Of a DNA stretch of 64,000 nucleotides, positions 26,050 to 64,000 are shown in pieces; position 1 is the stretch's first letter; each line of letters starts with the position of its first letter. Location: contig OZ287752.1 in the NCBI GenBank assembly GCA_965649765.1, positions 17,484,001 to 17,548,000 on the forward strand. Reading direction: 5' to 3'. The translations under genes and the position numbers were made by a program. The notes under the pieces were generated by a model. The model saw only the letters and a list, made by a program, of their open reading frames with translations. It was not told the origin of the DNA and searched no databases. This DNA comes from Bispira polyomma (Eukaryota).

Positions 26050-27400
26050 CAGCAAGTAGGCGCCTCAAGCAGAAGTGAAGTTTTGGTGAGTGAGATAGTC
26101 AACAATGCCTGTAAGCGACTCGTCAACATAAAGTTGGATCTGGGGTTTGACATGCTTGAATAATTGTAGTAATTAGGAACCCCAGTGTCAACCACTGTTT
26201 TACGCGCTAATGTAACCCAATCATGTAATGATTCTGCCTGTATTTGATTGCTGCTAACAGCTGACAGTTGTCTTTCAATAGGTTGTGAAATGAAGCCTAC
26301 ATTTTATGAATTTTGAAGTATTGACTGGTGAAAATTCATTACTATCAAAGTTTTTCAAATAACCATCCTGCTGTTGCTGTGTAGTTTCAAGTATTTTATT
26401 GTCTGGATTTTGCTGCAAGAGCCCAGAGGTACGAGTACCTCTTCTAGTGTAAGTGACTACCATGGGTGAAGACCCATTAATATTGAAGTGGGTGGGGTGC
26501 CAATCATCCTAGCACGTGTGTACTGAATTAAAATGTTGACGCCGTTCCCCACTAGTGCACATGAGTTTGAATTTGAATTTGGATATTTAATGTCCACTCT
26601 AGTATCTTTCAGTAGGTTATATTGGGATGGGTAGTTGGAAACACTGGAGGAAACACTGCATACAGTTGGTCAAGGTTCTGCAGTGAAACCAGCGGCCCAC
26701 AGTAAGGAACTACCACCTTTCCCACATAGGCATGGACCTGGGCCTGAATAGCATCATTACCACACAGGAACTGTGCATCAGGTAACAGACTTTCATCATC
26801 AGGCACATGTGACTGCAGATTAATATATTTGTCCCTTTTTGCACGACACGCCTGAGCACACTGATGAGATCTTTTTGGTGAACTATGAAAAATCACTCCC
26901 AAGGACTGATCTAGCGATTGATTGTCTATTTTCTGTTCTAGTCTTTTGTTGTTCTGTCCTAGATCCTGAATCTTGGCCAAGATCACTGGCAGAGCTCCAT
27001 CTGATGTGGATTCAACAACGGGTGTAGAAGCCACTCCCCCCACAGCACCACAAAGTTGTTGATCTTGAGGCTGGTCTTCTTCTTCACCATCTGGTTGTGG
27101 AGAAAATGTGTTTAGACGACAATTTCTCCCCACAGGTCTCGCGTGTTTTGCAGGTTTTCCCATATGGTCACACGTCTTGCAGAAGAATGCCATCCTATAA
27201 CACAATTATTCCTTCGCCCCCAGCAGAACCTGGCTTGTAATGCAGTATCAAGTACTTTACTGGAAACAAATTTTTTCACCCATGTGTTTGAATTTAATAC
27301 TTGATTTTCTACTAATATTATCAAGCTTTACTAAGACCTACAAGCCGCGCCCTGCTGATGACAGAATATTAACAGGTCTATCTTCTAGCTGACAAAATTC
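26050..27400 (-). mobile_element. Relic of Ngaro-like DIRS element (gag N-terminus, start of RT), interrupted by a SINE
   Basis: MAFFCKTC..HARPVGRNC resembles KTAFCKRC..HRPVGRDC of element 2; VDTGVPNY near 26170-26200 resembles the RT N-terminus. Confidence 0.7.
26565..26733 (-). mobile_element. tRNA-derived SINE family 1, 5'-truncated copy
   Basis: Matches the body and tail of 46434-46686; tRNA head absent. Confidence 0.9.
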
Positions 27401-41000: not shown

Positions 41001-41866
41001 ATTGAATTGTTACATGTATATTTTAAAGAATGACGGTCCAACAACATATGAAAATGTACCATCTACAAATGAAATTAGCAACTATGAAATGACAAAACCG
41101 GAGGAACCAACACTACCAGCTGAGTATACAGATTTGAAGGTTTGGCCACTGCATAATTGATACAACTCAAATAATCACAACAAGTATTATAACTGACATA
41201 GGAAATATTTGTTTGCATTATTTCCAAGTAACTATTTAGAAATATTATTTTTCATACAGATATTTGCTTTAAATATGAACTTTATTATCCACTCTAATGT
41301 AAGTGTGATGTTTTCATACAATGTACCGTATCAACTGGTTTTTAGTGTCAATTCTGGATAATTTATCAAACACAAAGTTGTATAGTAATGTGGCTAATAT
41401 AAAATATCAACCTTAAACAACATAATGGTATATTAAACTCGATTTTTAGAGCTTCATAAATACGCATTTGAGACTAATTTGTGTAATAACTGTTTCGAAA
41501 GTAGTGAACCTTTGTATCTTTTAAGTAGTTTTAATATTGCCATATTAAACAAATCAATTCATAAAGTTATAAAACCTGTTGATCAAAATCAAAAGTAAGC
41601 AAGTTTGTATTTGATGTTACTTTTTTAAGGTTACAACTCTGTACTGTTTTGGTTTGTGTTATATAACCCCCGTGAGATTTCAAATATTTTAGGACTTTTT
41701 CTGACTGTTTTGTGTTATATTTTGACCTATATAAGCACAATAATTATATCTTATCAGTGGACTCGAGAAGATATTGTTTGATTCATATATTTTTAATATA
41801 CACTACTCTGGTAGTTTTATTATTATATTATTATTCCAGCAAGTGACATATGAAACCATCAACTGA
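28969..41866 (+). CDS. Gene B: multi-exon IgSF type-I receptor (SP, V + 6 Ig, FN3, FN3-like, TM, ITSM/ITIM-like tail)
   Basis: 13 in-frame exons: 28969-29020, 29282-29614, 30648-30968, 31234-31548, 32060-32350, 33611-33907, 36638-36916, 38226-38531, 38917-39213, 40178-40444, 40604-40752, 41029-41139, 41840-41866(TGA). Confidence 0.87.
29282..29614 (+). CDS. Gene B Ig1 (V-set-like, 4 Cys)
   Basis: [30 protein letters not shown]; 333 nt, same as gene C exon 2 (alternative acceptor 29264). Confidence 0.88.
30648..30968 (+). CDS. Gene B Ig2
   Basis: [28 protein letters not shown]; T|gtaggt. Confidence 0.9.
31234..31548 (+). CDS. Gene B Ig3
   Basis: [32 protein letters not shown]; T|gtgagt. Confidence 0.9.
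32060..32350 (+). CDS. Gene B Ig4 (absent from the supplied ORF track)
   Basis: cattttag| [58 protein letters not shown]|gtaagt; 291 nt open. Confidence 0.9.
32383..32554 (-). mobile_element. Old degenerate tRNA-derived SINE related to family 1
   Basis: ttggtcaaaattctgcact.taaacc..taccaacttt..cata..gattcga..cagaggtg..cacta parallels the family-1 minus-strand sequence. Confidence 0.6.
33611..33907 (+). CDS. Gene B Ig5
   Basis: tctcaag| [32 protein letters not shown]; T|gtaagt. Confidence 0.9.
34150..35170 (+). mobile_element. Degenerate L2/CR1-group LINE 3' portion
   Basis: [14 protein letters not shown] (degenerate YADD), [31 protein letters not shown] fragments. Confidence 0.75.
35385..36360 (-). 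mobile_element. L2/CR1-group LINE 3' portion, internally deleted
   Basis: [44 protein letters not shown]; (attgt)n tail at 35385-35402. Confidence 0.9.
36638..36916 (+). CDS. Gene B Ig6 (I-set-like)
   Basis: [30 protein letters not shown]; T|gtgagt. Confidence 0.9.
37170..37577 (+). mobile_element. L2/CR1-group LINE 3' fragment
   Basis: [19 protein letters not shown] followed by ccttagaatc..agataagcgctata(ttaga)n tail. Confidence 0.85.
38226..38531 (+). CDS. Gene B Ig7 (single Cys)
   Basis: [28 protein letters not shown]; donor G|gctagt (GC), vs G|gtcagt in gene C. Confidence 0.85.
38638..38746 (-). mobile_element. SINE family 1, tRNA-like head only
   Basis: Minus strand ggggccgcggtggcctagtggttagc (A box)..gagttcgaatccc (B box)..tatgtgggaaagg, then ends. 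Confidence 0.9.
38917..39213 (+). CDS. Gene B FN3
   Basis: [36 protein letters not shown]; G|gtacca. Confidence 0.92.
39544..40113. mobile_element. MITE with imperfect TIRs (Harbinger/PIF-like ends) in a gene B intron
   Basis: Left gccgtggttacattgagc vs right gcccagtgtgaccacag; TAA-like flanks; CpG-rich relative to surroundings; not seen in the equivalent gene C intron. Confidence 0.6.
40178..40444 (+). CDS. Gene B divergent FN3-like domain with Cx5C
   Basis: [30 protein letters not shown]; A|gtaagt. Confidence 0.82.
40604..40752 (+). CDS. Gene B transmembrane exon
   Basis: [50 protein letters not shown] |gtaagt. Confidence 0.88.
40838..40952 (+). mobile_element. Internally deleted tRNA-SINE (family 2) with 13-bp TSD
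   Basis: gtggccgagtggttag A box joined directly to the tail cccaatatgaccctggctgtt..aaactttgac; TSD tcttttattttag at 40825-40837 and 40953-40965. Confidence 0.8.
41029..41139 (+). CDS. Gene B cytoplasmic exon
   Basis: [37 protein letters not shown]; collinear with gene C 58865-58975. Confidence 0.85.
41840..41866 (+). CDS. Gene B last coding exon QVTYETIN*
   Basis: ttattccag|caagtgacatatgaaaccatcaactga; paralogous to 59114 onward. Confidence 0.82.
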   Translation, partial: QVTYETIN

Positions 41867-44957: not shown

Positions 44958-45205
44958 TGAATTGAATTGAATTTGGATATTTAACGTCCACTCTAGTACC
45001 TTTTTAGGTTATATTGGGATGGGTAGTTGAAAACGCTGAAGGAAACACTGCATACAGTTGATCAAGGTTCTGCACTGAAACCAGCGGCCCACAGTAAGAA
45101 ACTACCACCTTTCCCACATAGGCATCGACAGGATTCAAACTCACAACCCCCAGAGGTGAGAGAGCAGTGATTGTGAAGCGCAATGCTTGCTAACCACTAG
45201 ACCAC
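44958..45205 (-). mobile_element. SINE family 1, near full length
   Basis: Reverse complement of 46434-46686; (tgaat)n tail. Confidence 0.92.
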
Positions 45206-46433: not shown

Positions 46434-46686
46434 GGGGCGGAGGTGGCCTAGTGGTTAGCAAGCATTGCGCTTCACAATCACTGGTCTCTCATCTCTGGGT
46501 GGCGTGAGTTTGAATCCTGTCGATGCCTATGTGGGAAAGATGGTAGTTCCTTACTGTGGGCCACTGGTTTCAGTGCAGAATCTTGATCAACTGTATACAG
46601 TGTTTCCTCCAGCGTTTCCAACTACCTGTCCCAATATAACCTGAACAGGTACTAGAGTGGACGTTAAATATCCAAATTCAATTCAA
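46434..46686 (+). mobile_element. SINE family 1, full length, 15-bp TSD
   Basis: A box gtggcctagtggttag, B box gagtttgaatcc, (attca)n tail; TSD ttttaactacatcag at 46419-46433 and 46687-46701. Confidence 0.95.
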
Positions 46687-49372
46687 TTTTAACTACATCA
46701 GAATATGACTTGTTTTTGAACCTAACCCAATGAGCCCTCTAGGTAGTGTGGCCCCTGTTTTCATACACATTACTATACAGACAAGTTCATTTGTTTGCGC
46801 ACGCAACTATAAATGCAAAAAGCCTCTCATGTATTTGTTTACTCTGCGGATTCAGTACTGTTCTATCACCAATTTCTTTCTTGATAGTTGATCTTTCATA
46901 TTGAGAATCCAAATTTCCACAGTTTTTCCTTTAATATTGCTTTCATCTTAAAAATTGTTTAAGTTAGGATCCCAGTATTTAAAGAGACATTTAAAACTAT
47001 TTAAATTTAGGGGGTTTCTAAATTTCAACTTAACATGTGATAAGGTTCAAAATAGAAAACAGAAGTAAAGTGGGATCCACATAGATTTTCTCTTTAAAAG
47101 ATGACCAAAGAATTTAACTGTAGGCCGGATTTTATATTTACAACTTGTACTTGTATCTTTGAAATTAATGCTTTGTGCTTTATAAATTTGTATACAAACT
47201 ATTTAACTGACTGATAATGGCTATTGAATTTACCTATTCAGAATTTACCTGTTAAGCACAGATTATCAATTTGGATGTAGTCAAAGTAAACTAAAGTTCT
47301 TTAAAGTTTCAGCTCGGGATTATTTTACAAAGCAAAGTGTAAATATGGCTCTCAGAAATGCATAATTGGATTGAGGTAATTGTGAATTAGATTGAAGGGA
47401 TTTGGCCGACTAAATGATCAAGTAACTGTAGTAATTGATGAATCAGATCTTCAATATTTGATCTCAATACAATATGTTACATATATTTTGTTAACCAAAA
47501 AATATTAATTTAATTTGAAAGAAAATTTACTTTGATATGTAGCAAATCACTTTCTTTGATTAGGTTGGTCAGCAGTCACCGTTCAGCAGTTGTAATTATT
47601 GTGGTTGTGGGATAATCTTTAATTATTGTTTAGTTGTCGAAATGTAGCTATAGGAATGAGGCCTTTGAGAATAAGACTACTGTTTGAACATCTTAGTTGA
47701 TTTTTGACCTTTATCTTCTTTGATTTTTGACGGTACATGTCTCGCTAAAATCATAACTTAATCTCTCCCTTATTAGTTTGCAATAACTCCATCTGATTAT
47801 TCTGATATATATCAATTTCTCACTACCTAACATTTTGATTGTAATTGATGAATGATTGTGTGACCAACAATTTGATCCTAACTAGCTCTACCCCAACAAC
47901 TAAACTAAACAGCAAATGAAAGATTATCTCAATTTTATGAAGATAAAAATATGTTTCGATGTTTTGACAAAACAGCCAAGGCTCCATACGTCTGAGGAAA
48001 TCTATTTATATACTTCTACTTTTACAGGTGGTGTGCCTTTCACCATTTTTACTTTCAAAGCCTTGTTGGGCTTTAACCGCTTGAAACTCTTGACCAACTT
48101 GGAAAAGCATTATTGCATCGCCTTATTTATTTTTGAATTCACAGGTTTTATTTATGTTGCAGTCATATGGGTACTAACTTCCAATGGCCAGACAAGAGGC
48201 ACATACGTATGCCTTGGTTCCATGGTCACTTGGGGCCAATAAATTTGCTGTTTAGCCCAAACTGCTTCTCGACCACCCCTTTATGATTTGTGGATACCTG
48301 TTTCGTTGAGTTGAGCTAACTCTTTCAGCCGAGAGTCCACGTGTGGCTTTCTTTACAAAAGTTATACTTAAAGGTTTTTTAGTGGAGGCTTTGAGATATA
48401 CGTATTCAATGACTGTTAAGGATTTGAGTCGAATTACACTTGAATGTCTTCAGAATTAGAATAAAATACAGCCTTTAAATAAAGCTCCACCAAGAGAGAA
48501 TGAGCATATGTATTTTTCTCAGAGACAATTTAGGTAATAATAATTTTAACTTCATAAACTGAATAAACTTTTAGAATTTTTTTGTATCTATTTGTGTATT
48601 TTGTTTCTTTTCAATTTATTCTTTTTCAAACGTAATGAAAACATATATTTGTATTTTGATGTGCTAAGAGTATAAACAAAGATATATAACTATCATAGAT
48701 TAAAATTTTGGCTGGGAGTTTTTGTTTCATTAGCAGCACATAACTACACTGTACCATAAAATAATACAACAATGAAGTAATATAATACCAGCCATCCAGT
48801 GAATGTCTATAAGATCTGCACAATAACATTATGAATCTCTTGACATAGTAAATTTGATAGGGAAGTATATTATGGAGGAGGAGATAAGATATCTAGTGCC
48901 AGGTGAAAGAGAAAGATAAGAGAAAGGACGTGGGGGCAAGGAAATGGCAGAAATACTACAGTATTACGAATAGATAAGGGGAAAAAGAAATTGTTTATAA
49001 ATTTTAGTATAATTCATATTTCACAAAAGGAAAAATGTCTTTCAATGAGTGACATCGTAATTAATTTAATCGCTCTTAAAAGTGGATAATGCCAACGTGT
49101 TACGTGTAATTTGCTACTAATTGCAATAGTAGATCAATTTTACATTACAGTCTATTTATTTCAATCTTATGTCGCTTTTATACTTCCTTTATATGTTAAA
49201 ACAAACTATATATATATATATAGATATATATATATATATCCATATTACTTGAGTTTGTGTGGATGAGAAAATGTATTGGTAAACAGAAAGTAAAACGTCA
49301 TTCTGTAAATACATAAGGCAAAACATATGTTACTATCAGAATATACTACTAGGATATATTCTTTGAACCAAT

Positions 49373-49424
49373 ATGGAAGGGATTATTATTATAATAATAA
49401 TGTATGGTCTACACCTGTGTTTGT
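49373..49424 (+). CDS. Gene C signal peptide exon MEGIIIIIIMYGLHLCL
   Basis: T|gtaagt; 52 nt as in gene B. Confidence 0.85.
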
Positions 49425-52400
49425 GTAAGTACTAACTAATCTAATTCTTTATATTCCGTATTTATAAAAGTTAATGTTAAAGTATATATTGAACTAACTA
49501 TTATGATTTATGCATAAAACTTTTAATAAATAATTACACTCACGACTTAAAATATGTGTGTAAAGATCTATAGAATTTAGATCATTTTCTTGAGATTTCT
49601 TTGTCTTTAATCAAATATCAATCCAGAGTTAGAGATTTTAGCAAATTGATTAGAACTTACATTTATGCTTTTATTATTGCTTCTTCAAAAATATTTGCCG
49701 TTAGGCTTCAGTTCCTTCTTTAAATATTATTTTCAATTGTTTGTGTGGAAAGCAAAACAACTTAGTGAACAACATATATGCAACTACTAAGTAATCATAT
49801 CATACATGTACATTAGTCAGGACAGCAAATTAGTAGTGTTTTATTTTCAGCTGCCAGTTGTCCTCATTCAAGCTATGAATATGACAGTGAAGAGTTTGCA
49901 GAGGCAGGAGGTTCATTTAATTTACAGTGTGGATCATTGGGTGAGGACACAGTAGTAATTTGGTCCTACCAATCTGGAACACTTCTGGTAAAACACAGCC
50001 TTCAGGGTGGTGACACTGGCGTTGTGTATACTAATGAAAGCATCTACCCCAGGACAAAGTACATTTACAGTGAGGTGGATTACTCACTGACTATACACGA
50101 TGTGGGACTAGAGGACCAGAATTGTTTTAGGTGTGCAACAAGTCCATCTAACAGACAAACTACAACTCTTGTTACACTTATAGGTATGTATGCAGCAACA
50201 AACTCTCTAATAATTACTTAATTCAATATATTTATTTGATTATGTATGTTCTAAGGAGATTTGGAGTGTATTAACATTTGAATATGTGGTTATTGTCCAC
50301 GTCTATATTTTTCTTTCAGTTACTCTCAGGGTGCCTGCATTTTTCAACTGACTTTGTAGTCTCATGTATTCTTAGCTGTATGGTTTTGATGTTATATTAC
50401 AGGTGAAGAAAGAAGAAAATTACCAATCATTCAATTATTACTATGGTTTATTATGATGTGCCTTAAGTATACTACTGTACAACTGGTTTCTGATATATTA
50501 TATATTGTGAATCCAGTATGAGTACAAAGGTTATATTTGGTCATTGTTGTGAATGTTTTTAAGTTTAAGCCAAGAAAAGAAAAAGAAAAACATCTCAAAA
50601 CTTAAGTAAATTTGACAATCTAGTTAATGCATTCACACCATTATCTGCCTCAGGCCTGTATAGGTACCTAATATGTCTAACAGGCAAACTATTTTGCCCT
50701 GTATATTCACTTAATATATCAGTGATAATTTGATATCACAAATAGATATAAAAAAGTGAGACAATATCAATAATGAGTAAGAAGAATCAAATCAGTGTCT
50801 GATATATGCACAAGTGGTGATATTAGTGATATCCTTGTATCCAACTGTAAATCGTTTTAAATCATTGGTAAAATTTCCATGTGTAGTTGTTGGTGCTTCT
50901 TTGTGCAGACTGGAAATCACTATTAAATTTTTTATGTGTAATTTGAGACACTTTTTTCAACCTGCCCATCCATATTAAATTTTACATCAATAACACAGTC
51001 ACAAAAGATTTCAATGGCCTCTAAGGCAAATTTACACAGTTTGTCTACTGTCCTACCCACAATAATATCTTTCACCTCATCATTGCTCAAGTCCAAACTG
51101 ATAAATGTTGTCTGGGGACTCTGACCAGCGACATACCTTCCACTCTCCAACCCCCAAACACAATTCTAATAAAGTGAAACTTTAAAAGAGTATGATAAGA
51201 ACAAGAACAACTGAAGTTCTGAAGGCTGCACACTATTGGCATTATAATATACCAGTGATACCTTGCTCACAGTCATATTCGATTTTATGCTATTTTTCAT
51301 TCATGACACTTACGCCATTTTCAACAAATTTGTTTTTGTTGTTTTTAGCCCATTTTGTCATACAGTTTAATCCCAAAAAATTGTTGTTAGAGACCATTGA
51401 TATCATCATTGTATTTTAATAATTATAGAATATGGGAAACAATTACACCCTTCCTAAACGCATGAATACTATATTGTCTGTTTAAATGTTAATATATATA
51501 TATATTATGAATCCCCAGCAGTCTGTCATTGTGACCTAGTGGGTAATCCACTCACTTGGGAATACAGTGCTTTAGTGCCAATCTGGGTCCAGCAGGTACA
51601 GGCAGATAAATAGTTGCTGGTGTATACCATGCAATTGGTCACTTGATCCAACTAAAATAGTTTCAGTGGGTTTTTTTATAATATCAACAAAATGTTCAGT
51701 TTATTGCATTGATGTTTTCATTTTGTGTTTAGTAAGACCAGACACACCCAGCTTCACAGTATTTACCACTTTTCAAGAAGGCACAATGGAATCTATCCAG
51801 TGTAAAGTATCATCTATCAAACCAGGGAAGGGAAGTATCCAGTTTACTGTCAGAGTAGATCCAGACTTCAGTGTTGAGAGTTCAGACAGTGAGTTGTCAG
51901 AGGTAGAGGTAGACTCTAATACAGGAGCTGTGTCAGTGAGTTACACAACAGAGATCAGACTACAGAGAAAACACAATGGACAGGATACAGTGTGTGAAAT
52001 AGAGTGGAGAGGAGAAACTTTTATTTCTAATACACAACAGGCTGATGTTGAATGTAAGTAGTATATACATATGGTAGGTTACATTATGTAGCTAATCCTT
52101 TGAAATAGTAAATATTGCTAATTAATTAAGTAACCTTTGTTCAACAGTAATATATGGTATTGTAGCATTATAATGTAGCTAATTCTTTGAAATAGTAAAT
52201 ATTACTAATTAATTAAGTAACCTTTGTTCAACAGTCATATATGGTATTGTAGCATTATAATGTAGCTAATTCTTTGAAATAGTAAATATTGCTAATTAAT
52301 TAAGTAACCTTTGTTCAACAGTCATATATGGTATTGTAGCATTATAATGTCATTATTCTACAGTCATTTATTAAAATGAAATGTTACTGGTAGCTGTATT

Positions 52401-55400
52401 AATACAATCACGAAAATGTAAAATATGTATGCTGGATTCAAAACATATATTATCCCTTGAATCAAAAGGATACTGGAGAACCTTGTTTTCAATGATAACA
52501 TATATTCCCGCCCAAAGGAATCTCTACTTACAAGCACCCTAGGTACTGTATTTAGAGTACACAGTTTTGGGATTTAAATTTAATAAAACGGCCAAAATGG
52601 GTTACAATATATATATACACACAATATCTTAGGGTGACAAGTCAGTTTTCAGTATATATCCTCCCACAGAAAACCACTCACACACATAGACAAATATATG
52701 TGATGACTAAAAAGCCTGATCACAAGGGTATCCTGATGTTTATTTGGTGAAATTATCAATACTTTCTTAACTAAATAATAAATAAACAAAAATAATCATG
52801 AGCACATGGGGATGTTTGGGTGTTTAGATAATACTGAATGATTTCAAGTGCGAAACAAACAAGAACAGTTCATGAAAAAAAAACAGAGAAGAGCCGTGGG
52901 GCAAGGCTACTGAATGAAGTAGTCCTATATCCTGGTGGTTTTTATCTTTGAAAATGTAAACATATAGCCAGCACAACAAATGGGGGGCAGAGGGGAGGGC
53001 ACAGCTGTGATTCTGGCATGACTTTTTGAAGCGTCTCCCCCAAATGGACATTTTAAAACTAAACAATTGAAAACTGCATGAAAATGTTCAAATAATTATA
53101 TATCAAAACATTTCATTGTTGTAAAGTACTTGCCACCAAAACAAAATGTGACATCAGTACTTACAGCTCTTGCATTATAATATATCCCGTAGATATTTAT
53201 CATTGTATTTCCAAAGACAAGCAACACACATTAAAGGCTAGATCTTATCAATTTATCTTGACAGATATTTGTAACACATTTCTTCCGGGTGTGATTAGAA
53301 CTGGGTATCTTGTTTTGCTGCTCCCTTGCACCAGTCTTACTGTGGGCTTTTTAGACTGATGCTGGGCTAGAAAATATAGGGAATATTTATGGGTTTTGGC
53401 TTAGAGAAAGACGGATTGCATGTAGGGACACTAAAAGACAACTTATGTGGCATTTAAAGATGTGCCAGTCCCATTCTATTATGAGAGCCTTTAGGGCCTG
53501 CATCCTAATAGTATATTTATCAGTTTTCCTTATATTAGAATAACACATGTTGACAATAAGTATATTCCTACACCTTTATATGCTAATATGAGGGTGGGGT
53601 TTCCACTAGCTGAGAAGTGTTCAAACTGTAAGGGACGTGTGTAAAGTGGGCAGTGGCCTTTACGTGACTGTGTTATACACTGTGGGAATATTCTGGCAGT
53701 TGTTTTTTTAAAGATACAGCCACGGTGAATTAGCTGACCCTATTACACGCTGGTCTGCTAATTTAATATATAGTCCATCACCATTTAAAATTTGATGTTT
53801 GTGGTTTCAGTAGCTAAACCTTGCCTTAATTAAAATTAGATTGCATAGGTTTCCATTCAGTTATGGGGACTCATTATTTGATGTTCAATGTTGGATAACT
53901 ACATGCATTCCCACCAAATTTAAACACCATATTTATATAGTTCTCACTACCTCAACGACTGTCATGTCCTTACCTACTGGTACAGCTGTGTTTGTGTGGA
54001 GTAAAGATAATGATCCAGTAACACCACATGTATCCCATCTAATTTAAGCACCACATTTTGTAGTTTCTGCAACCTCAGTCACCATTACTTCCCCCTACGA
54101 TGGGCCAGTGTCTGAGAACACATATGTGTATTATAAATACTTTGTGTTAATTATTTTAATAAAAAAAGTAAGACAGTTTATATATATCAGTCAGAATCTC
54201 GTCCAGAAATGAATAAGAATTAAAAGATGAGAGTTAACGACTTGGGAATCTATTTTATTATTCTCTAAAGGTTAGTGATAACATAGGTTTACAAACATGA
54301 GGAATTTAAAGCCCCAACATGGTATACTAATAAGATACTAAAACACATAAAACATCTTATAAAACAAGTTAGTGGTACAACACCAACATCAACTGCTAGT
54401 TCAATACTAAAACCCATAAAACATGTAAACAAGGGTTGGTGATGCAACACCAAGCAAGGGTGGGTGGGATTCAAATCATTTAACATAAAAGTTCAATATA
54501 ATGAGGTGGAGGAGCGATGCAGCTACTTATATAGTGGGTGGTCAGCCCCTATTGGTCAAGAGTGGACGAGTCCAAATTTGGACCAGGCGATTTTGACTGA
54601 AGGTAATAAGCTTTGCGTTTATTACCCCCACAGTCAGAATAAGAATTAAAAGATGAGAGTTAACGACTTGGGAATCTATTATATTATTCTCTAAAGGTTA
54701 GTGATAACATAGGTTTACAAACATGGGGAATTTAAAGCCCAAGCCCAAAACAGCATTTATGTAGAGGAATTTACCAAATGTTGGAAGGTGAGAGGGACAG
54801 TGTTAGTTTGAGAGGTATTGGAGCTAATGTAAGACCAGACTGCATCACTCCTCCATGTACCATGCATACGGATGCTGTCCATATCTACATTCGCATCGTA
54901 TGCCAACGTCGCTGCAGAACGACGAAACGTGTGGAAGCCATGCCCTAACAGAGGCACTTCCATGATTCTTAAAATTGAAGCTAACCTGCGTCTAAGCATA
55001 GACTGCGTCAATATTTCATAGTGATCAGTCAAGAATAGAGAATAAGCTTTGCGTTTATTACCCCCATATACATCATTATGTATGTATAATACATTTCATA
55101 TATTGTTACTTCTGAATAAATTGTTAGATTCATTAAACTAAGAAGGGAACTTAATATCAGTGCAACAAATATATGTACATGTAATATAAAATTTCAAAAC
55201 ATTTGTAAGAAAACAAAAGTATCGAAGACTGTTGCCTTATGTCTGAAAACAGTTACCTTTGTACGATCAGTTCACAAGTCAAAAAGACATTCTAGCAACA
55301 GTTTATCATATGATTCTCCTTAGCTGTGAAAGATCTGGCTCATGAGATTTGCTGCCTCCGCACTTGCCTGTTTTAGGAACAAGCTCAAACCTACCAATTG

Positions 55401-58400
55401 AGGAAGGCTTTTCCACCTTAGGCGACTCAACTTTTTCCTCCATCTCCGCGGTCATGACCTCTGTATGTTCAATGGCTACATGAAATTGACAAATGATTTT
55501 CTGTCTCATGCACCTTAGAATCTTCTAGATCAGAGATAAGCACTATACATTAGATTAGACGAGATTTATAATGCGAAACAATTGATACTGATACTTATAA
55601 TATGTCTATGTTTTTATATTCATTTTGTTTCATGTTTAAACATGGTGACTTTGCAAATTTAATTGTGTGACTCTCACAAATCAGGTCTACAAACTATCAC
55701 AATGGTTAATATAACATATATATTTATTTATTGCCTCTTTATTTTTTCAGTTCCGCTTAATGTTGCAGTCATTCAAAATTCGTCACATTTTGTGTCAGAA
55801 GCCTCAAGTCTGACCTTGACCTGTGAAGCTACAGGAGGTAACCCACCTGTAGTGCTGTCTTATAGCTGGAGTTTTGTAGCTCGGTATGAGGATAGCAGTG
55901 AGCTGAGTAGTGACACAGAGAAAGTGTTGGAGCTTGACGGTGTAGATTACAGACAGGCTGGAGTGTACAAATGTGAGGTGACTAATGGGCGAGGTGTGAA
56001 CAGTGGGAGTAAAGAAGTACTTGTACAATGTGAGTAATCAAGTATTGTAATAGTAAATATAGTAGAGTTTGACATGGTACACACGGGTCCAAATTGATAT
56101 TATATTATAACAAATGATACATACGGCATGATATTCATCAAATAAACAATAATAACATATAAACTTGTCTCATGTAACAGTTGTTATATTGCAAAGGCGG
56201 TAAATTGTTCCACTTTGTGTTTACATAACATACAATACATGATGGTCATTTACGTTTCCTATTTATTGGTACATAATGTTAATGTATGTACTTTGTCTCT
56301 CAATTTAGAAAGTTTATGGTAGACCATAAATTTTTTGTTAAAATTATTTCTGGTCATTTATCTCACAGTTTCCCCAATAGATGTGAGTTCACCCATACAG
56401 AAGGTCACATACACAAAAGTAAATAATAAGGCTTTACTAAACTGTACAGTGAAAGCTTATCCACTAGTCACTACTGATCATGTGGATGTCGTGTTTAATG
56501 GTTCTAAAATACCTAGTAACACTACCCATGTTCAGCCAGTGGAAGACAAAGTGGATGAAACTCTGATAGAGCTGACATTTGACCATGTTACAGTTGAGGA
56601 CTTTGGTCTGTATCAAGTTGTACTGAATAATGGTATAGGAGATGAAGTGGTGGTTGAACTACACTTGATTGAACAAGGTCAGTAATTGCTTTACAGCTAC
56701 AAAAAGTGTTTAGATTTGGAGCAATTATTAGTATAACAGGCACTTTTTATGAATATTTAACTACACAAAAAACAAAACTCTAATCGATAAAGGAAAAAAA
56801 AAGTTATATTAAACAACACTTTTAAGAAAGCCTAGGTGTCCAGTAATTCAGGCATATCCTCAGTTATAATATTTTACAGTCCAAGTGTTGTTTTATTTTT
56901 TAAATATATAGCAGTACATAGATTAAACATTCGAAAATCTTAAACCTCAAATATTCCATTGTTAGTAACTGCAAATATTCTTTGTTCTGTGTTTCTTTTT
57001 TATAGTTTAAAGTTATAACCTATAACTTAAGAATATTGTTAGAACTAAATATGAGTAAACATTAGTCAGGAGAGTTCACTTTTAGTTAACATATTCATGA
57101 TGAATCAAGTAGAGAAATATTGTAGGGTTATAGTATTTTGATACTTCACCTTTGGATTAGGTGGCAATTTTGCAGACAATGTTCAGACTATATCTCAAGA
57201 AGTACCAGATGTTTGTGATACCAAAAATCTCAAATATGTTATAGCTTAAAATCAGAAAGTGCATCACTGTTACCCATAATGTTAGTTACTTTACATTTAT
57301 TGATTATCTATTCATTTGCATATGTAATTTTTCCAGCTGTTCCAAAACCACCACATTCTTTGGTCTTTGAGTCAGTAACTGCCATATCAGTGACCCTCTC
57401 TTGGATTTCTGGTCAGAGTCGTGGTGCAGAACGAACCTTTACAGTGTATTACAGACATCAAGGGGACACCAAAATACTGTATCATGCTGGAATCCAGACC
57501 AGTGAAAATAGCAAAATAACTGTGTACAAAGTGTCCAGTTTATTACCTGATACAGAGTACTTTTTTAGAGTTAAAGCACAAAACCAATTTGGAGAGAGTG
57601 AACATCAGCCAGAGATATCAGTTACAACTTTAGGTACCTGCATATCTTTAGTTATGCCACCATTAATAATTAATAAGTGCATATTTTTGTCCAATGAGGT
57701 GTAAAATTTAAATATATTCTCCATATTGTTTGTATACAGTCAATATGCAACAATTGGAACTTCTAAAGCAAGGAGGCTGTCATATCTATGTATATTAAAG
57801 TTTGTAAATGCATATGTGGCATAGCAGCGAACACACATGCAGGAATGCAGATGTTTTGGGTTGAACCCCAGCTTGGGTGTCCCAGGTACAATTAATACCA
57901 CTTAAAATCGTGGTGCTCTGTTGTTTGGTTTATACCCAATGACTTTTAAAGAACCTTGGATATGTTGATATTGTCATTCTTAAGCTTTTGTCTTCAGTTA
58001 GTAGGATGACATGTACTGATGCTGGTTGGCTGTAGTTGAACAGTCATAAAAAATTGTTTGTTACACACTTTGAATACCAAACAATGGCAAATAAATGTAT
58101 TGGGTATACATATGAATCTAATACATATGACAATTCGAGATATTATATACCTTTTACTCATAATTTAGAGTCATATTTTCTACTTTATCTTAGGTCTACC
58201 ATCAGTGAAAGGGATATTAGAGGCAAAAATATATGGAGATGCTGTGATCTTGTACTGGGGATACATAGATGGAAACTACACAAGAGCTGCTCTATTGCAG
58301 TGTTACAATGGAAGAGAAAATTGTGTGTCCATATACCACATTACTGGTGTCAGTGTTGCAAGATATGCAGGAGACACTGCATATGATGGAGAGGAGTATT

Positions 58401-58921
58401 ACCTTGTGATATATCAGGATAATGATGAAGTAACAGCCCAGCAGTTTACTATGATTAACAAAAGTATGTTTACCTGTGAAAAAAACCCAGATCTTATAAA
58501 GTTTGTGTTCTGTTTGACATACCAGATTGTTATTTAGATCTGTAAGAATGTGGTCTGCTTTTCAGTTGTTAAAGTAACTGGACTGATAGCGGGACTAGTA
58601 ATCACATCCACCATGGTTAGTTTACTTACAGTTGCCCTAATTGCACTGATTGTGTACTACAGAAGGAGACAGAACCAACATGGTGACACTACTAAATGTT
58701 CTCCCGTAAGTAATAATATGGACAATTACTATATTTACCAGACTTAGATCAATGACAGTATGATTTGTGTGATATGTGTTTTCTTCTCTTTTAGAGAGTT
58801 TTCATTAGTTCCATTTAGTTTTTTTGTGACATGTTTTTATTTAAAGACATGTATATTTTTTAAGAATCAAGGTCCACGTACATCAAGAAATGTACCATCT
58901 AAACATGAAATCAACAACTAG
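49373..58921 (+). CDS. Gene C: paralog of gene B with 4 Ig, FN3, FN3-like, TM and a truncated Tyr-motif-free tail (candidate decoy receptor or young pseudogene)
   Basis: Exons 49373-49424, 49851-50183, 51733-52053, 55751-56029, 56369-56677, 57337-57633, 58194-58463, 58566-58705, 58865-58921(TAG); ancestral last exon at 59114. Confidence 0.83.
49851..50183 (+). CDS. Gene C Ig1 (V-set-like, 4 Cys)
   Basis: ttttcag| ASCPH..GGSFNLQC..VIWSY..DQNCFRC; G|gtatgt. Confidence 0.9.
51733..52053 (+). CDS. Gene C Ig2
   Basis: 321 nt, collinear with 30648-30968. Confidence 0.9.
52087..52347. repeat. 87-bp tandem repeat x3 in a gene C intron
   Basis: tgtagctaa..gaaatagtaaatatt..aacctttgttcaacag..gcattataa at 52087, 52174 and 52261; single copy in gene B (~30996-31085). 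Confidence 0.92.
54188..55066 (-). mobile_element. Miniature non-autonomous Ngaro-like element with split direct repeats (A1-YR fragment-B1-A2-B2)
   Basis: aataagctttgcgtttattaccccca at 55042-55066 and 54606-54630; ~105-bp repeat at 54637-54741 and 54211-54315; YR C-terminus FHTFRRSAAT..HGTWRSDAVWSY (54757-55032). Confidence 0.85.
55230..55560 (+). mobile_element. L2/CR1-group LINE 3' fragment (same family as 37170-37577)
   Basis: acgatcagtt.acaagtcaaaaagacatt, aggcttttccaccttag and ccttagaatc..agagataagc..(ttaga)n are shared. Confidence 0.8.
55751..56029 (+). CDS. Gene C Ig3 (equivalent to gene B Ig6)
   Basis: 279 nt; [19 protein letters not shown]. Confidence 0.9.
56369..56677 (+). CDS. 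Gene C Ig4 (equivalent to gene B Ig7)
   Basis: [24 protein letters not shown]; G|gtcagt. Confidence 0.9.
57337..57633 (+). CDS. Gene C FN3
   Basis: 297 nt, collinear with 38917-39213. Confidence 0.92.
58194..58463 (+). CDS. Gene C FN3-like domain with Cx5C
   Basis: [25 protein letters not shown]; A|gtatgt. Confidence 0.85.
58566..58705 (+). CDS. Gene C transmembrane exon
   Basis: VKVTGLIAGLVITSTMVSLLTVALIALIVYYRRRQNQHGDTTKCSP |gtaagt. Confidence 0.88.
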
Positions 58922-58975
58922 GAGATGACAAAACCGAAAGAACCAACACCACCAGCAGACTATACAGATTCGAGG
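58865..58975 (+). CDS. Gene C cytoplasmic exon with premature TAG (58919-58921)
   Basis: NQGPRTSRNVPSKHEINN*; the remainder EMTKPKEPTPPADYTDSR is collinear with gene B. Confidence 0.82.
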
Positions 58976-60488
58976 GTATGATCACTGTATAATTGATACT
59001 TATTCAAATGTAATAACTTAATGAGCAAAGATTTTTTAAATTGCTTTTAATATTTACAGATATTAATTTTATTCCGATACTTGATTTAAATCTGTACTAT
59101 ATTGTCATTGTAGCAAGTGACATATGAACTGAAGAATTGCTGCTTAAAACTTACAAATATACAGAAGAAGAAGTTTAACTGACATATACATAACAATGAT
59201 AGCAACTGTACATACTCAGATGTTAGAACATTTTTATAATATTGCATATTGCATGCACTTAAGTAATAACTGGACTTGAGTCTACTGTGTACCCCGCTCA
59301 TAGATTACAATATGTCTTCCATATACTTTACTAATTTTTGTTTAATCTTAATCTTAAAAAGTAATAATTTGCATGTATTGTTGTATAATCTTGATATTAA
59401 ACACTATTTTTGTCATTTTTATCCTGAAATATCCAGCACTCATATTTTAATATTTGTTGTACCAATTATTTGAATGTATTCATGAAAATATTTAGCAATG
59501 TATATAACCATAGTTATTGATGCTTCCGATTCTGGCTTCTGACAAATCATTAATTTAAATCATTAATTTAAAATCATTGGTAAACTGTGGTAGCAAGGAT
59601 TTATTTCAAAGTAAATATTGTAGTGTTCCAGTGTTACTTTTAACTGACACAAAACGACTTGAGTGAACTAATCATAGTACAACCCACAGAGAATCAAGTG
59701 GGCCATTTCACACCCAAAAGTCTATGAGATATAGGAGCATAGTGTTTGCAGTGGTTCAGATAAAACTTTAGAATTACCACCTAATCTCAGAATGGTTTAC
59801 ATGGAACATATAAAGTTGAAAGTATTGGTAAAAGCTTATTGCTCTTTTATACTTGCAACTTTGGTAACTCTGTCCAAGTTTGTAACCGCCCAGTGTATCG
59901 ATAATAGTTTTTGGTGATAACGTGTTATTGTAAGAAAAATTTGGTATTTACTGATATCGGTGAATCATTTTCAGAAACCCACTGAGTAAATTATTGGGCT
60001 TCTTATTGACGATTTATTGACCCATACATCATGCTGACTCCTTGTCCGTCTGAGGTTGTTTATTGCTGATATTATAAACCAAATTGTGACTGTACATTAG
60101 GCAAAATTGCAAGGAAAAAAACTTTGGGTAAAATTATCCATGAAAGATATCAGGAATACCAAATTATTGCTTGTGGATATGGAAGATATTAACTGCATGG
60201 CTATATTTCCCGGTCAAGTATGTTTATTTTTAAGCTTTGAGCTATATTAAATAATTTCTGGGTTTTGTTTTAATTAGATGGGGTGACCAATAATAGTCTT
60301 CGCTTAACATTTGATTTTACACTTTCAATATGTTAGGCCACTTCTAAGTATATTGGAGTATTTATTTACATTCATATGACATAAAAACAATATATACTAT
60401 ATACTATGTTAAAGATAAATATATATACTTAGGGCCACGCTAGCTTCATTCTTATATAATTTTACATTTACATTAAAAACTTTCTTAT

Positions 60489-60712
60489 ATGGTACCCTTA
60501 CAAAAAGTTAAGGTCACCTTAAACTTTCCCATTTGTTAAACTTACAAAAAGTTAAGGTCACCTTAAAATAATTTCTTCGGTAGCCTTTCTTAATCAGGTT
60601 GACCTTAAAATAAAAACACTTCATTTATGGTAACCTTAACTTGCATTGCAACTTAAGATCACCTTTTCTTCTAATATTTTTTACCAAATTTCTAAGCTAT
60701 GGTGGCCCTAAA
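60489..60712. repeat. Array of TTAAGGTNACCTTAA palindromes
   Basis: Perfect ttaaggtcaccttaa at 60508-60522 and 60552-60566, plus degenerate copies. Confidence 0.8.
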
Positions 60713-60994
60713 CTCAGTTCTTAAATATATGTAGACCCTAACATAGAATAAAAATACTATCCCAAACACTGCTTGTTATACAATGTGTTAACCAATTGTC
60801 AAGGTTAGACTGCAAGGTCACAATGTTCTCATATATGAGAGAAAATATTATCTATTGAATCACTAAGTTGTCATATATAAAAAAGCATAATGGTCTGGTA
60901 TTTGTTTTTTTGAATCATAATGGTCTCTTACAAATAAAACTCTTGATAAACCATAATGTTATCATATACGTGTTAATAACTTTTTATGATAATC

Positions 60995-61150
60995 ATTATT
61001 TAAAAGCTGCCCAGCAGCCCATCGTGGCAAGGATAGTTCATCAAATGTTGGCCGTTTGCACGATGATCCCCCGGTCCGCCCCTCATTCGCCCATCTTAAC
61101 CTTTGATCATTTGATGCAATGTCTGTGTGGTTAAATTGACCAGATTTATG
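60995..61150 (-). mobile_element. Gag fragment of another DIRS/Ngaro-like element
   Basis: KSGQFNHTDIASNDQRLRWANEGRTGGSSCKRPTFDELSLPRWAAGQL aligns with KWPNHKILGG..LTVFQWVAGF (element 1) and PSYDELSPIMWFQGYL (element 2). Confidence 0.7.
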
Positions 61151-62701
61151 TCGTACACTGTTCTAACCTTGTGTAAAGATGGTTTGAGCTTGCAGCTTGC
61201 ACAGTAATCAGCTGCCTGGTTAAATGGAAGGTGTAAGTCGGTGACAAGACTGTCAATATTATGTGTATCTACTGTTTTAAGAACTGATTCACCCTTCCCT
61301 GTGTTTTTCTTTCCAGGCTGTTTCTTGGCCTTTGTCCCATCCATAGTGGGTGTTTTCTTAGTTCTTCCCATAACATTGTAGAACTGAAAGTATAATAGTA
61401 TATGTAAATATGTAAAAACAGACAAAGTAAAATAATAAAATAGAAGTTTGTGGTAAGAAAAATTTCATATATGTACACTGCCAAATTTCCATTGTGTTGA
61501 TTGGTGTACTGCCAATTCCAATGTAAAGAACCCTAATGCAGATCAGTGAATTCAGGGTGTGGAGCATTGTGATTGGCTAGGAGACATGGATTGACAGCAT
61601 GAAGTAGTATTCAATACTGCCAATGCGGATTAAGGTGTATTACAAGAACTGAAGCATTAGACCCCTTTGGGGTCGTGCTGTATAAACGTTATACACTTGC
61701 CCAAATTACACCATAGTCAGCCATAAAACTGACCACTAACACTAATAATTGAGCATTGTTGAATATGCTGCCTGCAAGTAGGCCCATGTTAGCCAGACTT
61801 AAGCAAGGGGAGGGAAGGCTCCTGAAAGACAAACAATGTGATTTGTAATCACATGCTATGGACACAATCACGGGGGAGCCCAGTGAATCACTTGGGCTAG
61901 ACTTAAATTCCTAATAGCCTAATTGCCACTACCTAAAAATAAAGGAAGAAAAAGTGAGAGAGACCACTGGTGCAGTCTGGGATATTTGCTGGAGATCAGT
62001 CCAGACTGATGATGATCTCCAAAGACCACATCACATTATGTTTTGTAGCAAAACATTATTGTTAAAAGCAAAGGTTACACCCAAACTACGAAAAGTATGG
62101 AAGCTGTGTCGAATTTCCAAATGAGTTATATGTTGTTTTTTTAGTGGTGCATGTGTGTGTGATATTCATTGATCATGACTATTAAAACTGCCATACAATT
62201 GGATATGGCCCCACGAGATAATTGGAACTAGGTACTCAAGAAATGTAATGACTGTATGTGTTGTAATATAAGCAATTCCTGCAAATTTTGTGAAAGCTAT
62301 GAAAATGTTGAACTGGTTGACATATGCAGTTGTGGTACAAGGTATAAGTGCAGATCACATTCTACCCCAGGCCGAATGCATAAACGGCTGGTTGATTGGA
62401 GTAGAACTTAGAATCACACAGATAGATCAAGGTTAAACAAGTCATTAGGGACCCTGTTCCACAAGTACTCCTTACTAATGTAACCAATCATTACACTGGC
62501 GGGTGGGGTATCTGAATGAATTAGTACAAGAAATTACTAAATCATAATGGTCTCGTACAGATAAATACTTACTAAACATGATGGTCTTGTAAAGATACAG
62601 AAGCATAAATATTCTTAAGATGTATCCAACTTTTCAATAATCGTTTATGGAAATTAGTTTGCATTTGTGGACCACGCAACATAGTACTTAAAGTTACACA
62701 C

Positions 62702-62956
62702 TTGAATTTGAATTTGGATATTTAACGTCCACTCTGGTACCTGTTTAGGTTATATTGGGACGGGTAGTTGGAAACGCTGAAGAAAACACTGCATACAGTG
62801 ATTAAGGTTCTGCACTGAAACCAGTGGCCCACAGTAAGGAACTATCACCTTTCCCACATAGGCATCGACGGGAGTCAAACTCACGCCGCCCAGAGGTGAG
62901 AGACCAGTGATTGTGAAGCGCAATGCTTGCTAACCACTAGGCCACCACGGCCGTCT
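62702..62956 (-). mobile_element. SINE family 1, full length, 10-bp TSD
   Basis: Reverse complement of 46434-46686; TSD agttacacac at 62692-62701 and 62957-62966. Confidence 0.95.
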
Positions 62957-64000
62957 AGTTACACACATGATTATCAATATTAAAATGTATTATATACGAT
63001 TATAGATTAACATTAATTATTTTGCTCTAAATAAAAATAAACAAACATTACAACAAAATTAAGTTGAATGCGTACAGTATGAGCAGCATCAAGTTTCAGT
63101 TACCCAAGCTGACTTAATGTCATAAACAGCCTATATGGGGCCATTATAATTAACAAAGTGTCAGCTTCAAAGGGGGGACAAACCCCCTCTTTCCTCATTA
63201 AAATATAACTAAGTCAACACAATGGTTTGCCGCCAAAAGTGCATAATTCTTGTAAACAAGTACCCAAAGGTTTCATATGAATTCAGCATTGGTGGGTGTA
63301 GGACAAAAAAATGATGGTATCAACAAGATTTTACGGACCATTAACAAATATTTTAAAAAAGGAATTTTACTTATTTACGTTCACAAATCTTTTTTTTTTT
63401 TTGCAATCTTTCATTGAACAGTACCTCGGTGATCAACTCCGGCAGTTAGGTATACAACTAAAATTTTGTTTCATGTTGATTTAAAAAAGCCCATATAAAG
63501 AAATGGACACCATAGGTGACAATTTAAAATTTTACAAACAGACATATTACATCAATACATAGACAATGTAACAAAACAAAACAAAAAAACAAAAAACATG
63601 TTACATTAAAAATGCTACCACAAATTTGTTCTCGAGAGTATATTATGGACTAAATGTAAAAAATGTAATGTCCTATTACTGCAAGAATGGTTATAATGTT
63701 ACAAACTTACTAGAAGTTTTAAAAATGCCTCATGTATTTCATTTGACACATTCAAATCTATCCAGGTATTCAATGCGGATGGAGGTTCGCCATTTTCACT
63801 ACTAAATTCGCAATACAAATCCTGACTCCCAAGTTTGTGAATAGGTCTTAACTTTTTATTTATTGCAAGCATGATGTAGTTTTCCCTCTATATTTCATTT
63901 AGATTATTCTTGAATCTTAGAGCTTTTAGCTATTCTGTAGGTAGAGCATTAATCAAACCGTAATATTCTAACCATGACATTCTAAAGGGAAATTTATTCA

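What the first reader, a model, noticed from the sequence alone, without database searches (positions are those of the whole stretch)
58865..59140. Gene C lost all four cytoplasmic Tyr motifs by four separate lesions while ectodomain and TM stay open
Against gene B: TTYENV became RTSRNV; SNYEM became NN*EM (TAT>TAG at the Tyr, 58919-58921); EYTDL became DYTDS; VTYETI is hit by an 8-nt deletion in the last exon (gaaaccatcaactga > gaactga). The upstream coding exons (about 2 kb) show no stop or frameshift and keep their splice sites. The first lesion lies upstream of the stop, so it is not just post-stop decay. The TM has no charged residue, arguing for a decoy or adhesion role rather than a DAP12/FcR-gamma-type activating partner. 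The stop is 54 nt from the last exon junction, at the edge of the 50-55 nt NMD rule.
Basis: partly seen in the sequence, partly recalled or inferred. Interest (0 to 1): 0.85.

Follow-up and report, generated by a model that had tools for sequence, protein, structure and literature searches.

The report
Receptor gene with an eroded signalling tail
One member of a large invertebrate family of immune-type surface receptors has lost every tyrosine signalling motif in its inner tail while its outer binding part still reads open, so it is either a signalling-dead decoy receptor or a gene caught early in decay.

Summary
Gene C (window 49373-59182, + strand) has 2043 open coding bases with all splice sites and the start codon intact. 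Then come RTSRNV, a TAG at 58919-58921, DYTDS, and an 8-nt deletion in the last exon.

Gene B is not C's nearest relative. That is a broken partial copy 29 Mb away, which keeps all four motifs, as do about 19 other paralogues. All four lesions are therefore C-specific.

The family is large: at least 27 close copies and over 130 related Ig exons. It turns over by birth and death, and 9 of 22 copies examined carry stops or frameshifts in the outer exons. C alone shows the reverse pattern.

On C's own branch the tail exon changed at or above the intron rate (10 of 111 nt, 7N:2S). FN3-to-TM shows 8N:8S (omega 0.29, p=0.015). A model that releases the tail first fits 20-96 times better than releasing the whole gene at once.

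Reads could not be obtained, so expression and TAG polymorphism are untested. My odds are about 0.55 for a tail-less, non-signalling receptor kept for a time and 0.35 for a plain young pseudogene.

The scan had already noted this family elsewhere in this genome.

The parts
49373..49424 (+). Gene C exon 1: ATG and signal peptide (MEGIIIIIIMYGLHLCL), donor GT, phase 1
49851..50183 (+). Gene C V-type Ig exon. Open, Cys/Trp/Cys kept. It is the most divergent exon in the family (55-68% aa identity to paralogues).
51733..52053 (+). Gene C second Ig exon, open
55751..56029 (+). Gene C Ig exon (Pfam Ig_3, E 4.7e-11), open. The three Ig exons that B carries between this exon and the previous one are absent in C.
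56381..56677 (+). Gene C Ig exon (weak Ig_3/I-set match), open
57337..57633 (+). Gene C FN3 exon (Pfam fn3, E 1.2e-12), open. 91-96% nt identity to C-like paralogues.
58194..58463 (+). Gene C juxtamembrane FN3-like exon. No Pfam match; family-specific; open.
58566..58705 (+). Gene C transmembrane exon: uncharged TM followed by YYRRRQNQHGDTTKCSP; ends in phase 0
58865..58975 (+). Gene C first tail exon. It carries RTSRNV (58877-58894; Tyr lost through a 3-nt cluster at 58884-58886), TAG (58919-58921, at the second Tyr) and DYTDS (58958-58972; Tyr kept, Leu at +3 changed to Ser).
59114..59182 (+). Gene C last exon. An 8-nt deletion after 59126 destroys the QVTYETIN-stop ending that all 18 other copies aligned keep. 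The end coordinate is the stop that would be reached if the TAG were read through.
41029..41139 (+). Gene B first tail exon, the comparator: TTYENV, SNYEM, EYTDL
41840..41866 (+). Gene B last coding exon, the comparator: QVTYETIN-stop

Best explanation
Gene C descends from an inhibitory-type Ig/FN3 single-pass receptor. Its cytoplasmic signalling tail was released from selection early on its own lineage. The reading frame of the signal peptide, six extracellular domains and the TM was still kept.

As it stands, the gene would encode a membrane-anchored receptor with a cytoplasmic stub of about 35 residues. The stub has no tyrosine docking motif and the TM has no charged residue. Such a protein could bind ligand or partner receptors but could not recruit SH2-domain phosphatases or adaptors. 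That makes it a non-signalling competitor (decoy) or a purely adhesive form.

Shown here: the lesions, their polarity, their restriction to C, the open ectodomain, and the rate contrast. Inferred: that selection kept the ectodomain after the tail was released. Not shown: that the gene is transcribed, escapes mRNA decay, reaches the surface, or is still under selection today.
For: 1. Polarity. About 19 paralogues keep the Tyr of T/x-Y-E-N-V and of N-Y-E-M, and all but one (L012, Tyr to Cys) keep the Tyr of E-Y-T-D-L. All 18 other copies aligned for the last exon keep an intact ITIM-type V-T-Y-x-x-I-N-stop ending. The broken sister copy L014 keeps the motifs, and a related gene in another species (L041) keeps the first three; its last exon was not examined.

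2. Rarity of a tail stop. Of 51 tail-exon matches in the genome, only C and one distant copy have an in-frame stop.

3. Rates on the C branch, polarised with L014 and 7 outgroups. The tail exon has 9 substitutions plus the TAG change in 111 nt, split 7N:2S. Flanking introns run at 4.4-5.1%. FN3+FN3-like+TM show 8N:8S, omega 0.29, p=0.015. The broken sister shows 10N:5S, omega 0.59, not significant.

4. Open frame. If the whole gene had been neutral for the whole branch, 3.2-4.5 new stops are expected in the 2043 nt upstream (P of none 0.01-0.04). None is seen, and all 18 splice dinucleotides and the ATG are intact.

5. Model comparison. A two-phase model (tail released first) beats the best one-phase model 20-96 fold, with frameshifts ignored.

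6. Conserved positions. C has 1 singleton replacement at family-invariant positions in 285 ectodomain codons, against 3 in the 37 tail codons.

7. Whole ectodomain on the long C lineage: 81N:38S, omega about 0.6. This differs from neutral (p=0.009) and not from intact paralogues (p=0.19).
Against:
- The family is full of broken copies: 9 of 22 examined have stops or frameshifts in FN3, FN3-like or TM. One copy whose first lesions fell in the tail is not very unlikely; my rough family-wise estimate is about 0.06.
- C's absolute non-synonymous count in FN3-TM (8) is close to that of the broken sister (10). The omega contrast rests on a few synonymous changes.
- Substitution rates vary 2-4 fold along the locus. 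The FN3 exon is slow even in the pseudogene, so intron-based neutral rates are shaky.
- With the 3-nt cluster counted as one event, the tail's excess over introns is not significant (p=0.12).
- A stricter count, limited to sites invariant in all other copies, gives 32N:8S for C's distal Ig exons (V, Ig2, Ig3). This is higher than the paralogues (p=0.04) and could mean relaxation. That count is biased towards N.
- The TAG lies 54 nt from the last junction, so the transcript may be degraded.
Confidence: 0.55

Rival explanations
1. Plain young pseudogene. C stopped being useful as a whole, and by chance its first visible lesions fell in the last 8% of the coding sequence. The ectodomain is open only because too little time has passed.
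For: - High pseudogene fraction in the family.
- C's nearest relative is itself a broken fragment.
- C has lost three Ig exons relative to B and to its C-like relatives.
- The non-synonymous rate in FN3-TM equals that of the broken sister.
- The distal Ig exons have an elevated N:S under the strict count.
- The premature stop sits at the edge of the mammalian NMD window.
Against: - The tail exon shows a full branch length of neutral change, yet the 2043 nt upstream show no stop, no frameshift and no splice-site hit. The one-phase model is 20-96 fold worse.
- 8N:8S in FN3-TM.
- Nine other broken copies all show the opposite pattern: ectodomain hit, tail motifs intact.
Confidence: 0.35
2. The gene still signals through something other than the known tail. 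Possibilities are an alternative 3' exon, stop-codon read-through, or a full-length allele (TAG polymorphic or an assembly error).
For: None directly. The TAG rests on a single assembly and could not be checked in reads.
Against: - Even without the TAG, motif 1 has no Tyr, motif 3 has lost its +3 Leu, and motif 4 is frameshifted. A TAG-free allele would still lack the family's motifs.
- No open frame with a plausible tail motif and family similarity lies between 58976 and 64000.
- Four separate differences cannot all be assembly errors.
Confidence: 0.05
3. Adaptive loss: selection actively removed the inhibitory motifs, for example to escape a pathogen or a ligand that exploits the inhibitory signal. 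This would explain a tail rate above neutral.
For: - On the C branch the tail exon has 10 changes in 111 nt against 41 in 1090 intron nt (p=0.02).
- 13N:3S on the whole lineage, the highest count among 20 copies.
- A precedent exists in the vertebrate CEACAM family, where derivatives of an ITIM/ITSM receptor arise by stop codons and serve as decoys (PMC2832619, PMC11646289).
Against: - The excess vanishes when the 3-nt cluster counts as one event (p=0.12).
- Local intron and 3'UTR rates are also high, 4.4-7.9%.
- Changes downstream of a stop cannot be selected at the protein level.
Confidence: 0.05

Closest known systems
CEACAM1 and its derived paralogues in vertebrates (PMC2832619, PMC11646289)
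   Same: Both are fast-evolving, tandemly expanded IgSF families founded on an ITIM/ITSM-bearing receptor. In both, members with similar binding domains and altered or missing tails arise through stop codons and other small lesions. Many copies are pseudogenes, and decoy roles have been proposed.
   Different: There is no sequence relationship beyond generic Ig domains. The family here has two membrane-proximal FN3-type domains. C has neither an ITAM-like tail nor a GPI signal. No function has been shown.
Paired receptors with a non-signalling member, e.g. SIRP-alpha versus SIRP-gamma (from my own knowledge; paired-receptor review PMC3533184 listed, abstract only)
   Same: An inhibitory member with several cytoplasmic tyrosine motifs has a paralogue with a very short tail and no charged TM residue. 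That paralogue can bind ligand but cannot signal on its own.
   Different: These are vertebrate proteins, unrelated in sequence. The SIRP-gamma tail is a clean truncation in an expressed gene. C's tail exons are still present and decaying, and its expression is unknown.
Activating KIR/Ly49/Siglec-type partners that couple to DAP12 or FcR-gamma (from my own knowledge)
   Same: They derive from an inhibitory receptor by loss of the ITIM-bearing tail.
   Different: Their defining charged TM residue is absent in C, so C does not work in this way.
Unprocessed pseudogenes of birth-and-death immune gene families
   Same: C is a tandem duplicate with a premature stop and a frameshift. It sits in a family where 9 of 22 examined copies are broken.
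   Different: The lesions are confined to the last 8% of the coding sequence. The rest is open and shows signs of constraint.

Membership tests
ITIM/ITSM-bearing inhibitory IgSF receptor (functional class) | Extracellular Ig-type domains and a single uncharged TM | tested here: met
   Pfam Ig_3/ig/I-set and fn3 on the exons. TM without charged residue.
ITIM/ITSM-bearing inhibitory IgSF receptor (functional class) | At least one cytoplasmic (S/I/V/L)xYxx(I/V/L) or TxYxx(V/I) motif in the translated protein | tested here: not met
   In C, motif 1 reads RTSRNV (no Tyr), the stop replaces the second Tyr, and motifs 3 and 4 lie beyond the stop and are themselves damaged. Gene B and about 19 paralogues meet this feature.
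ITIM/ITSM-bearing inhibitory IgSF receptor (functional class) | Phosphotyrosine-dependent recruitment of SH2 phosphatases or adaptors | not testable with these tools
   Needs biochemistry.
Activating paired receptor coupled to DAP12/FcR-gamma-type adaptors | Charged residue (K/R/D/E) within the TM helix | tested here: not met
   The TM reads GLIAGLVITSTMVSLLTVALIALIV.
Tail-less decoy or adhesion receptor | Ectodomain kept under selection after loss of signalling | tested here: inconclusive
   - omega 0.29 (p=0.015) on FN3-TM.
- No lesion in 2043 nt.
- The two-phase model is favoured 20-96 fold.
- Against this: few events, rate heterogeneity, and a non-synonymous count equal to the broken sister's.
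Tail-less decoy or adhesion receptor | Transcribed, translated and present at the cell surface | not testable with these tools
The protein libraries hold no near relative of this genome.
Unprocessed pseudogene | Disabling lesion in the coding sequence | tested here: met
   TAG at 58919-58921 and an 8-nt deletion after 59126. Both lie in the last two exons only.
Unprocessed pseudogene | Neutral evolution over the whole coding sequence | tested here: inconclusive
   The tail looks neutral (7N:2S; 13N:3S on the whole lineage). The ectodomain does not: 81N:38S (p=0.009 vs neutral) and 8N:8S on the terminal branch. Recent relaxation cannot be excluded.
Named vertebrate IgSF families (CEACAM, Siglec, PECAM, SIRP, nephrin) | Sequence homology beyond generic Ig/FN3 domains | tested here: not met
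   - PDB sequence searches with the V, Ig2 and FN3-like exons gave nothing below E=0.003, and no match to these families.
- The 1.84-billion-protein library gave at best 42% identity, to unnamed exon-sized ORFs.

The most novel reading that the evidence does not exclude
An invertebrate has independently evolved the logic of vertebrate paired receptors. Within a large inhibitory Ig/FN3 receptor family whose tail is the most conserved part, selection keeps a member that binds but cannot signal. This member was made by stepwise erosion of all four tyrosine motifs rather than by acquiring a charged TM. It would be a decoy in a host-pathogen or self-recognition arms race.
Probability: 0.3. Interest if true: 0.6.

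Novelty: new member of a known kind. Interest (0 to 1): 0.35.

Why it matters
If C is expressed and maintained, it would be a clean invertebrate example of how an inhibitory immune-type receptor turns into a non-signalling decoy. The intermediate steps would still be readable in the DNA. It would also show that the paired-receptor logic known from vertebrate KIR, SIRP and CEACAM families arises convergently.

If C is only a young pseudogene, it is one more casualty in a birth-and-death family. Its main value would then be to show, by contrast, how strongly the tail motifs are conserved in the other copies. Either way, the family rather than this single gene is the more interesting object.

Tried and rejected
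TAG confirmation, polymorphism, expression and splicing are therefore untested.

2. Protein libraries. The search of protein representatives with C's FN3-like exon gave only 10 hits, the best at 42% identity, all unnamed ENA ORFs. No annotated orthologue or transcript-derived protein was found.

3. Spliced model. Full-length relatives in the search for homologous proteins could therefore not be reached, and that tool was not used.

4. PDB sequence searches and Rfam on 48000-64000 found nothing relevant.

5. Alternative tail exon downstream of C: none found. The minus strand at the finding holds only a 71-aa ORF of no note.

6. Remnants of B's three middle Ig exons in C's 3.7-kb intron: none found.

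7. The N:S count limited to sites invariant in all other copies is biased towards N. I replaced it with a 75% majority rule.

8. Species identity: only the invertebrate-type mitochondrial code could be inferred, from COX1 with 9 in-frame TGA on contig C75.

9. A literature search for an invertebrate ITIM/ITSM Ig-FN3 family found nothing on it.

Full report
**What is there**

The window is G000:C5:17484001-17548000 of a 1.04-Gb, intron-bearing, AT-rich genome. Its mitochondrial COX1 has nine in-frame TGA codons, so the organism uses an invertebrate-type code.

Gene C is a ten-exon gene on the + strand:

| Exon | Coordinates |
|---|---|
| Signal peptide | 49373-49424 |
| V-type Ig | 49851-50183 |
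| Ig | 51733-52053 |
| Ig | 55751-56029 |
| Ig | 56381-56677 |
| FN3 | 57337-57633 |
| FN3-like (no Pfam match) | 58194-58463 |
| TM | 58566-58705 |
| Tail exon 1 | 58865-58975 |
| Tail exon 2 | from 59114 |

Pfam confirms the Ig and fn3 exons. All introns are AG/GT. The Ig/FN3 exons are phase 1 and the tail exons phase 0.

I translated exon by exon with the carried bases inside a script only.

**Check of the observation**

Every item is right:
- RTSRNV lies at 58877-58894, the TAG at 58919-58921, and DYTDS at 58958-58972.
- An 8-nt deletion follows 59126.
- 2043 nt are open before the TAG.
- The TM has no charged residue.
- The stop lies 54 nt from the last junction.

- The FN3-like exon has at least 27 close copies. 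Most lie in two clusters on C5, at 12.96-13.1 Mb and 17.0-17.55 Mb.
- One middle Ig exon alone has more than 130 relatives.
- B is only 67% identical to C in the FN3-like exon.
- C's nearest relative is a rearranged partial copy at C5:46.62 Mb (L014). It is 88% identical including introns and covers FN3 to the 3'UTR.
- L014 is broken: a TAG in the FN3-like exon, -6 nt in FN3 and -4 nt in TM.
- L014 still reads STYGNV, NNYEM, EYADL and QVTYEDIN-stop.
- About 19 further paralogues keep the Tyr of TYENV and of NYEM, and all but one (L012, Tyr to Cys) that of EYTDL. All 18 other copies aligned for the last exon keep an intact ITIM-type VTYxxIN-stop ending.
- A gene of the same architecture in another species reads IYENV, QYEM and EYTDLK. 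It sits on an ENA contig (L041) and is 42% identical in the FN3-like exon.

All four lesions are therefore derived and specific to C. The tail is the best-conserved part of the family: omega is about 0.35 for the tail exon in the other copies.

Of 51 tail-exon matches in the genome, only C and one distant copy carry a stop.

**Birth and death**

Nine of 22 copies examined have stops or frameshifts in FN3, FN3-like or TM. All nine still have open tail exons with their motifs. C shows the mirror image.

This cuts both ways. It makes C stand out. It also means that among about ten broken copies, one whose first two disabling lesions both fell in the last 8% of the coding sequence is not wildly improbable. 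The chance is about 0.006 per copy, so about 0.06 family-wise (my arithmetic from the lengths).

**Rates on C's own branch**

I polarised C-versus-L014 differences with seven outgroup paralogues.

| Region | C-branch changes | Notes |
|---|---|---|
| All introns | 41 of 1090 nt | 4.4-5.1% in the three introns next to the tail |
| Tail exon 1 | 9, plus the TAG change, of 111 nt | 7N:2S |
| FN3+FN3-like+TM | 8N:8S | omega 0.29, one-sided p=0.015 |
| Same exons, L014 branch | 10N:5S | omega 0.59, not significant |

- If the whole coding sequence had been neutral for the whole branch, 3.2-4.5 new stops would be expected in the 2043 nt upstream (P of none 0.01-0.04). None is seen, and no splice site or start codon is hit.
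- A rough likelihood comparison favours releasing the tail first and keeping the ectodomain frame. It beats the best single-release model 20-96 fold, with frameshifts ignored.
- At positions invariant in all other copies, C has one replacement in 285 ectodomain codons and three in 37 tail codons.
- Over the long C lineage the whole ectodomain shows 81N:38S, omega about 0.6. This differs from neutral (p=0.009) but not from intact paralogues (p=0.19).

**Cautions**

- C's non-synonymous count in FN3-TM is about the same as that of the broken sister.
- Substitution rates vary several-fold along the locus. The FN3 exon is slow even in the pseudogene, which hints at gene conversion or a cold spot.
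- With the three adjacent changes at the first Tyr counted as one event, the tail's excess over introns is not significant (p=0.12).
- A stricter but N-biased count gives 32N:8S for C's three distal Ig exons, against 95N:58S for the paralogues (p=0.04).
- C has also lost the three middle Ig exons that B and C's closer relatives have.
- The stem shared by C and L014 already carried four replacements in the tail exon.

**What could not be done**

The TAG is therefore unconfirmed in reads, its frequency is unknown, and transcription, splicing and mRNA decay are untested. The protein libraries hold nothing close to this genome. Whether it holds in this animal is unknown.

**Reading**

The most likely account (about 0.55) has three parts:
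- The tail of C lost its constraint early on C's own branch.
- The frame of the extracellular part and the TM was still kept.
- The gene therefore encoded, and perhaps still encodes, a membrane-anchored receptor that cannot dock SH2 proteins, which would act as a decoy or adhesion form.

A plain young pseudogene remains a strong rival (about 0.35).

The uncharged TM speaks against a DAP12-type activating partner.

No alternative tail exon is visible downstream. Removing the TAG would not restore the motifs.

**Comparison with known systems**

C works like tail-less or decoy members of vertebrate paired-receptor families. In the CEACAM family, derivatives of the ITIM/ITSM receptor CEACAM1 arise by stop codons and small lesions, and many copies are pseudogenes (PMC2832619; PMC11646289).

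There is no sequence membership in any named vertebrate family.

Earlier notes of this scan had already described this family elsewhere on the same chromosome. They reported a conserved inhibitory-type tail and a fast-evolving tip (s1-627045), and described this cluster as a possible signalling/decoy pair (s1-688774).

**Verdict**

It is a new member of a known kind. Interest is moderate.

Noticed in passing
G000:C5:46622532-46626836 (L014 and upstream): A rearranged partial copy of a C-like gene lies 29 Mb from the cluster. It lacks the V and the three Ig exons. It has a TAG in the FN3-like exon, -6 nt in FN3 and -4 nt in TM, yet keeps all four tail motifs.
   Followed up: partly
G000:C5:17085552-17092531 (L040, minus strand): In this paralogue the acceptor of the last exon is CAA instead of CAG. 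Ig3, Ig4, FN3, FN3-like, TM and the first tail exon are open. It may be a second case of partial tail loss (last ITIM only).
   Followed up: no
G000:C5:12997087-13007086 (L034/L015, minus strand): This paralogue has a strongly diverged tail exon (TKYDNL, GHSDM, EYTDF). The first codon of the last exon is TAA, and there is a stop in FN3. It looks like an older pseudogene.
   Followed up: partly
window 57337-57633 and its counterparts in paralogues: The FN3 exon is 91-96% nt identical among C-like copies, even in the broken copy L014. The flanking introns differ by 7-17% between C and L014. This may be gene conversion or a mutational cold spot.
   Followed up: no
window 52054-55750: C lacks the three Ig exons that B has at 31224-33912, with no remnant in this 3.7-kb intron. 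C's closer relatives (the L013, L017, L018 and L040 genes) carry at least the third of them.
   Followed up: partly
window 26567-26737, 38632-38746, 44960-45205, 46436-46688 (inverted), 62702-62952: A short interspersed repeat family, 90-95% identical between copies. A second element sits in a B intron (37272-37574) and a C intron (55254-55559).
   Followed up: no
window 52083-52350 and 54211-54740: Local tandem duplications, 97-98% identical, inside C's long intron.
   Followed up: no
L041 (ENA ERZ22147071, contig ctg31279l): Another, unnamed species carries a gene of the same Ig/FN3/FN3-like/TM architecture. Its tail exon reads IYENV, QYEM, EYTDLK. The motifs are conserved although the FN3-like exon is only 42% identical.
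   Followed up: partly
window 58884-58886: The first Tyr of C was lost through three adjacent substitutions (ATG to CAA relative to the sister copy). This suggests a single complex mutational event.
   Followed up: partly
G000:C75:4864-6204: Contig 75 is the mitochondrial genome. Its COX1 has nine in-frame TGA codons, and AGA/AGG sit at positions where Ser is expected.
   Followed up: no
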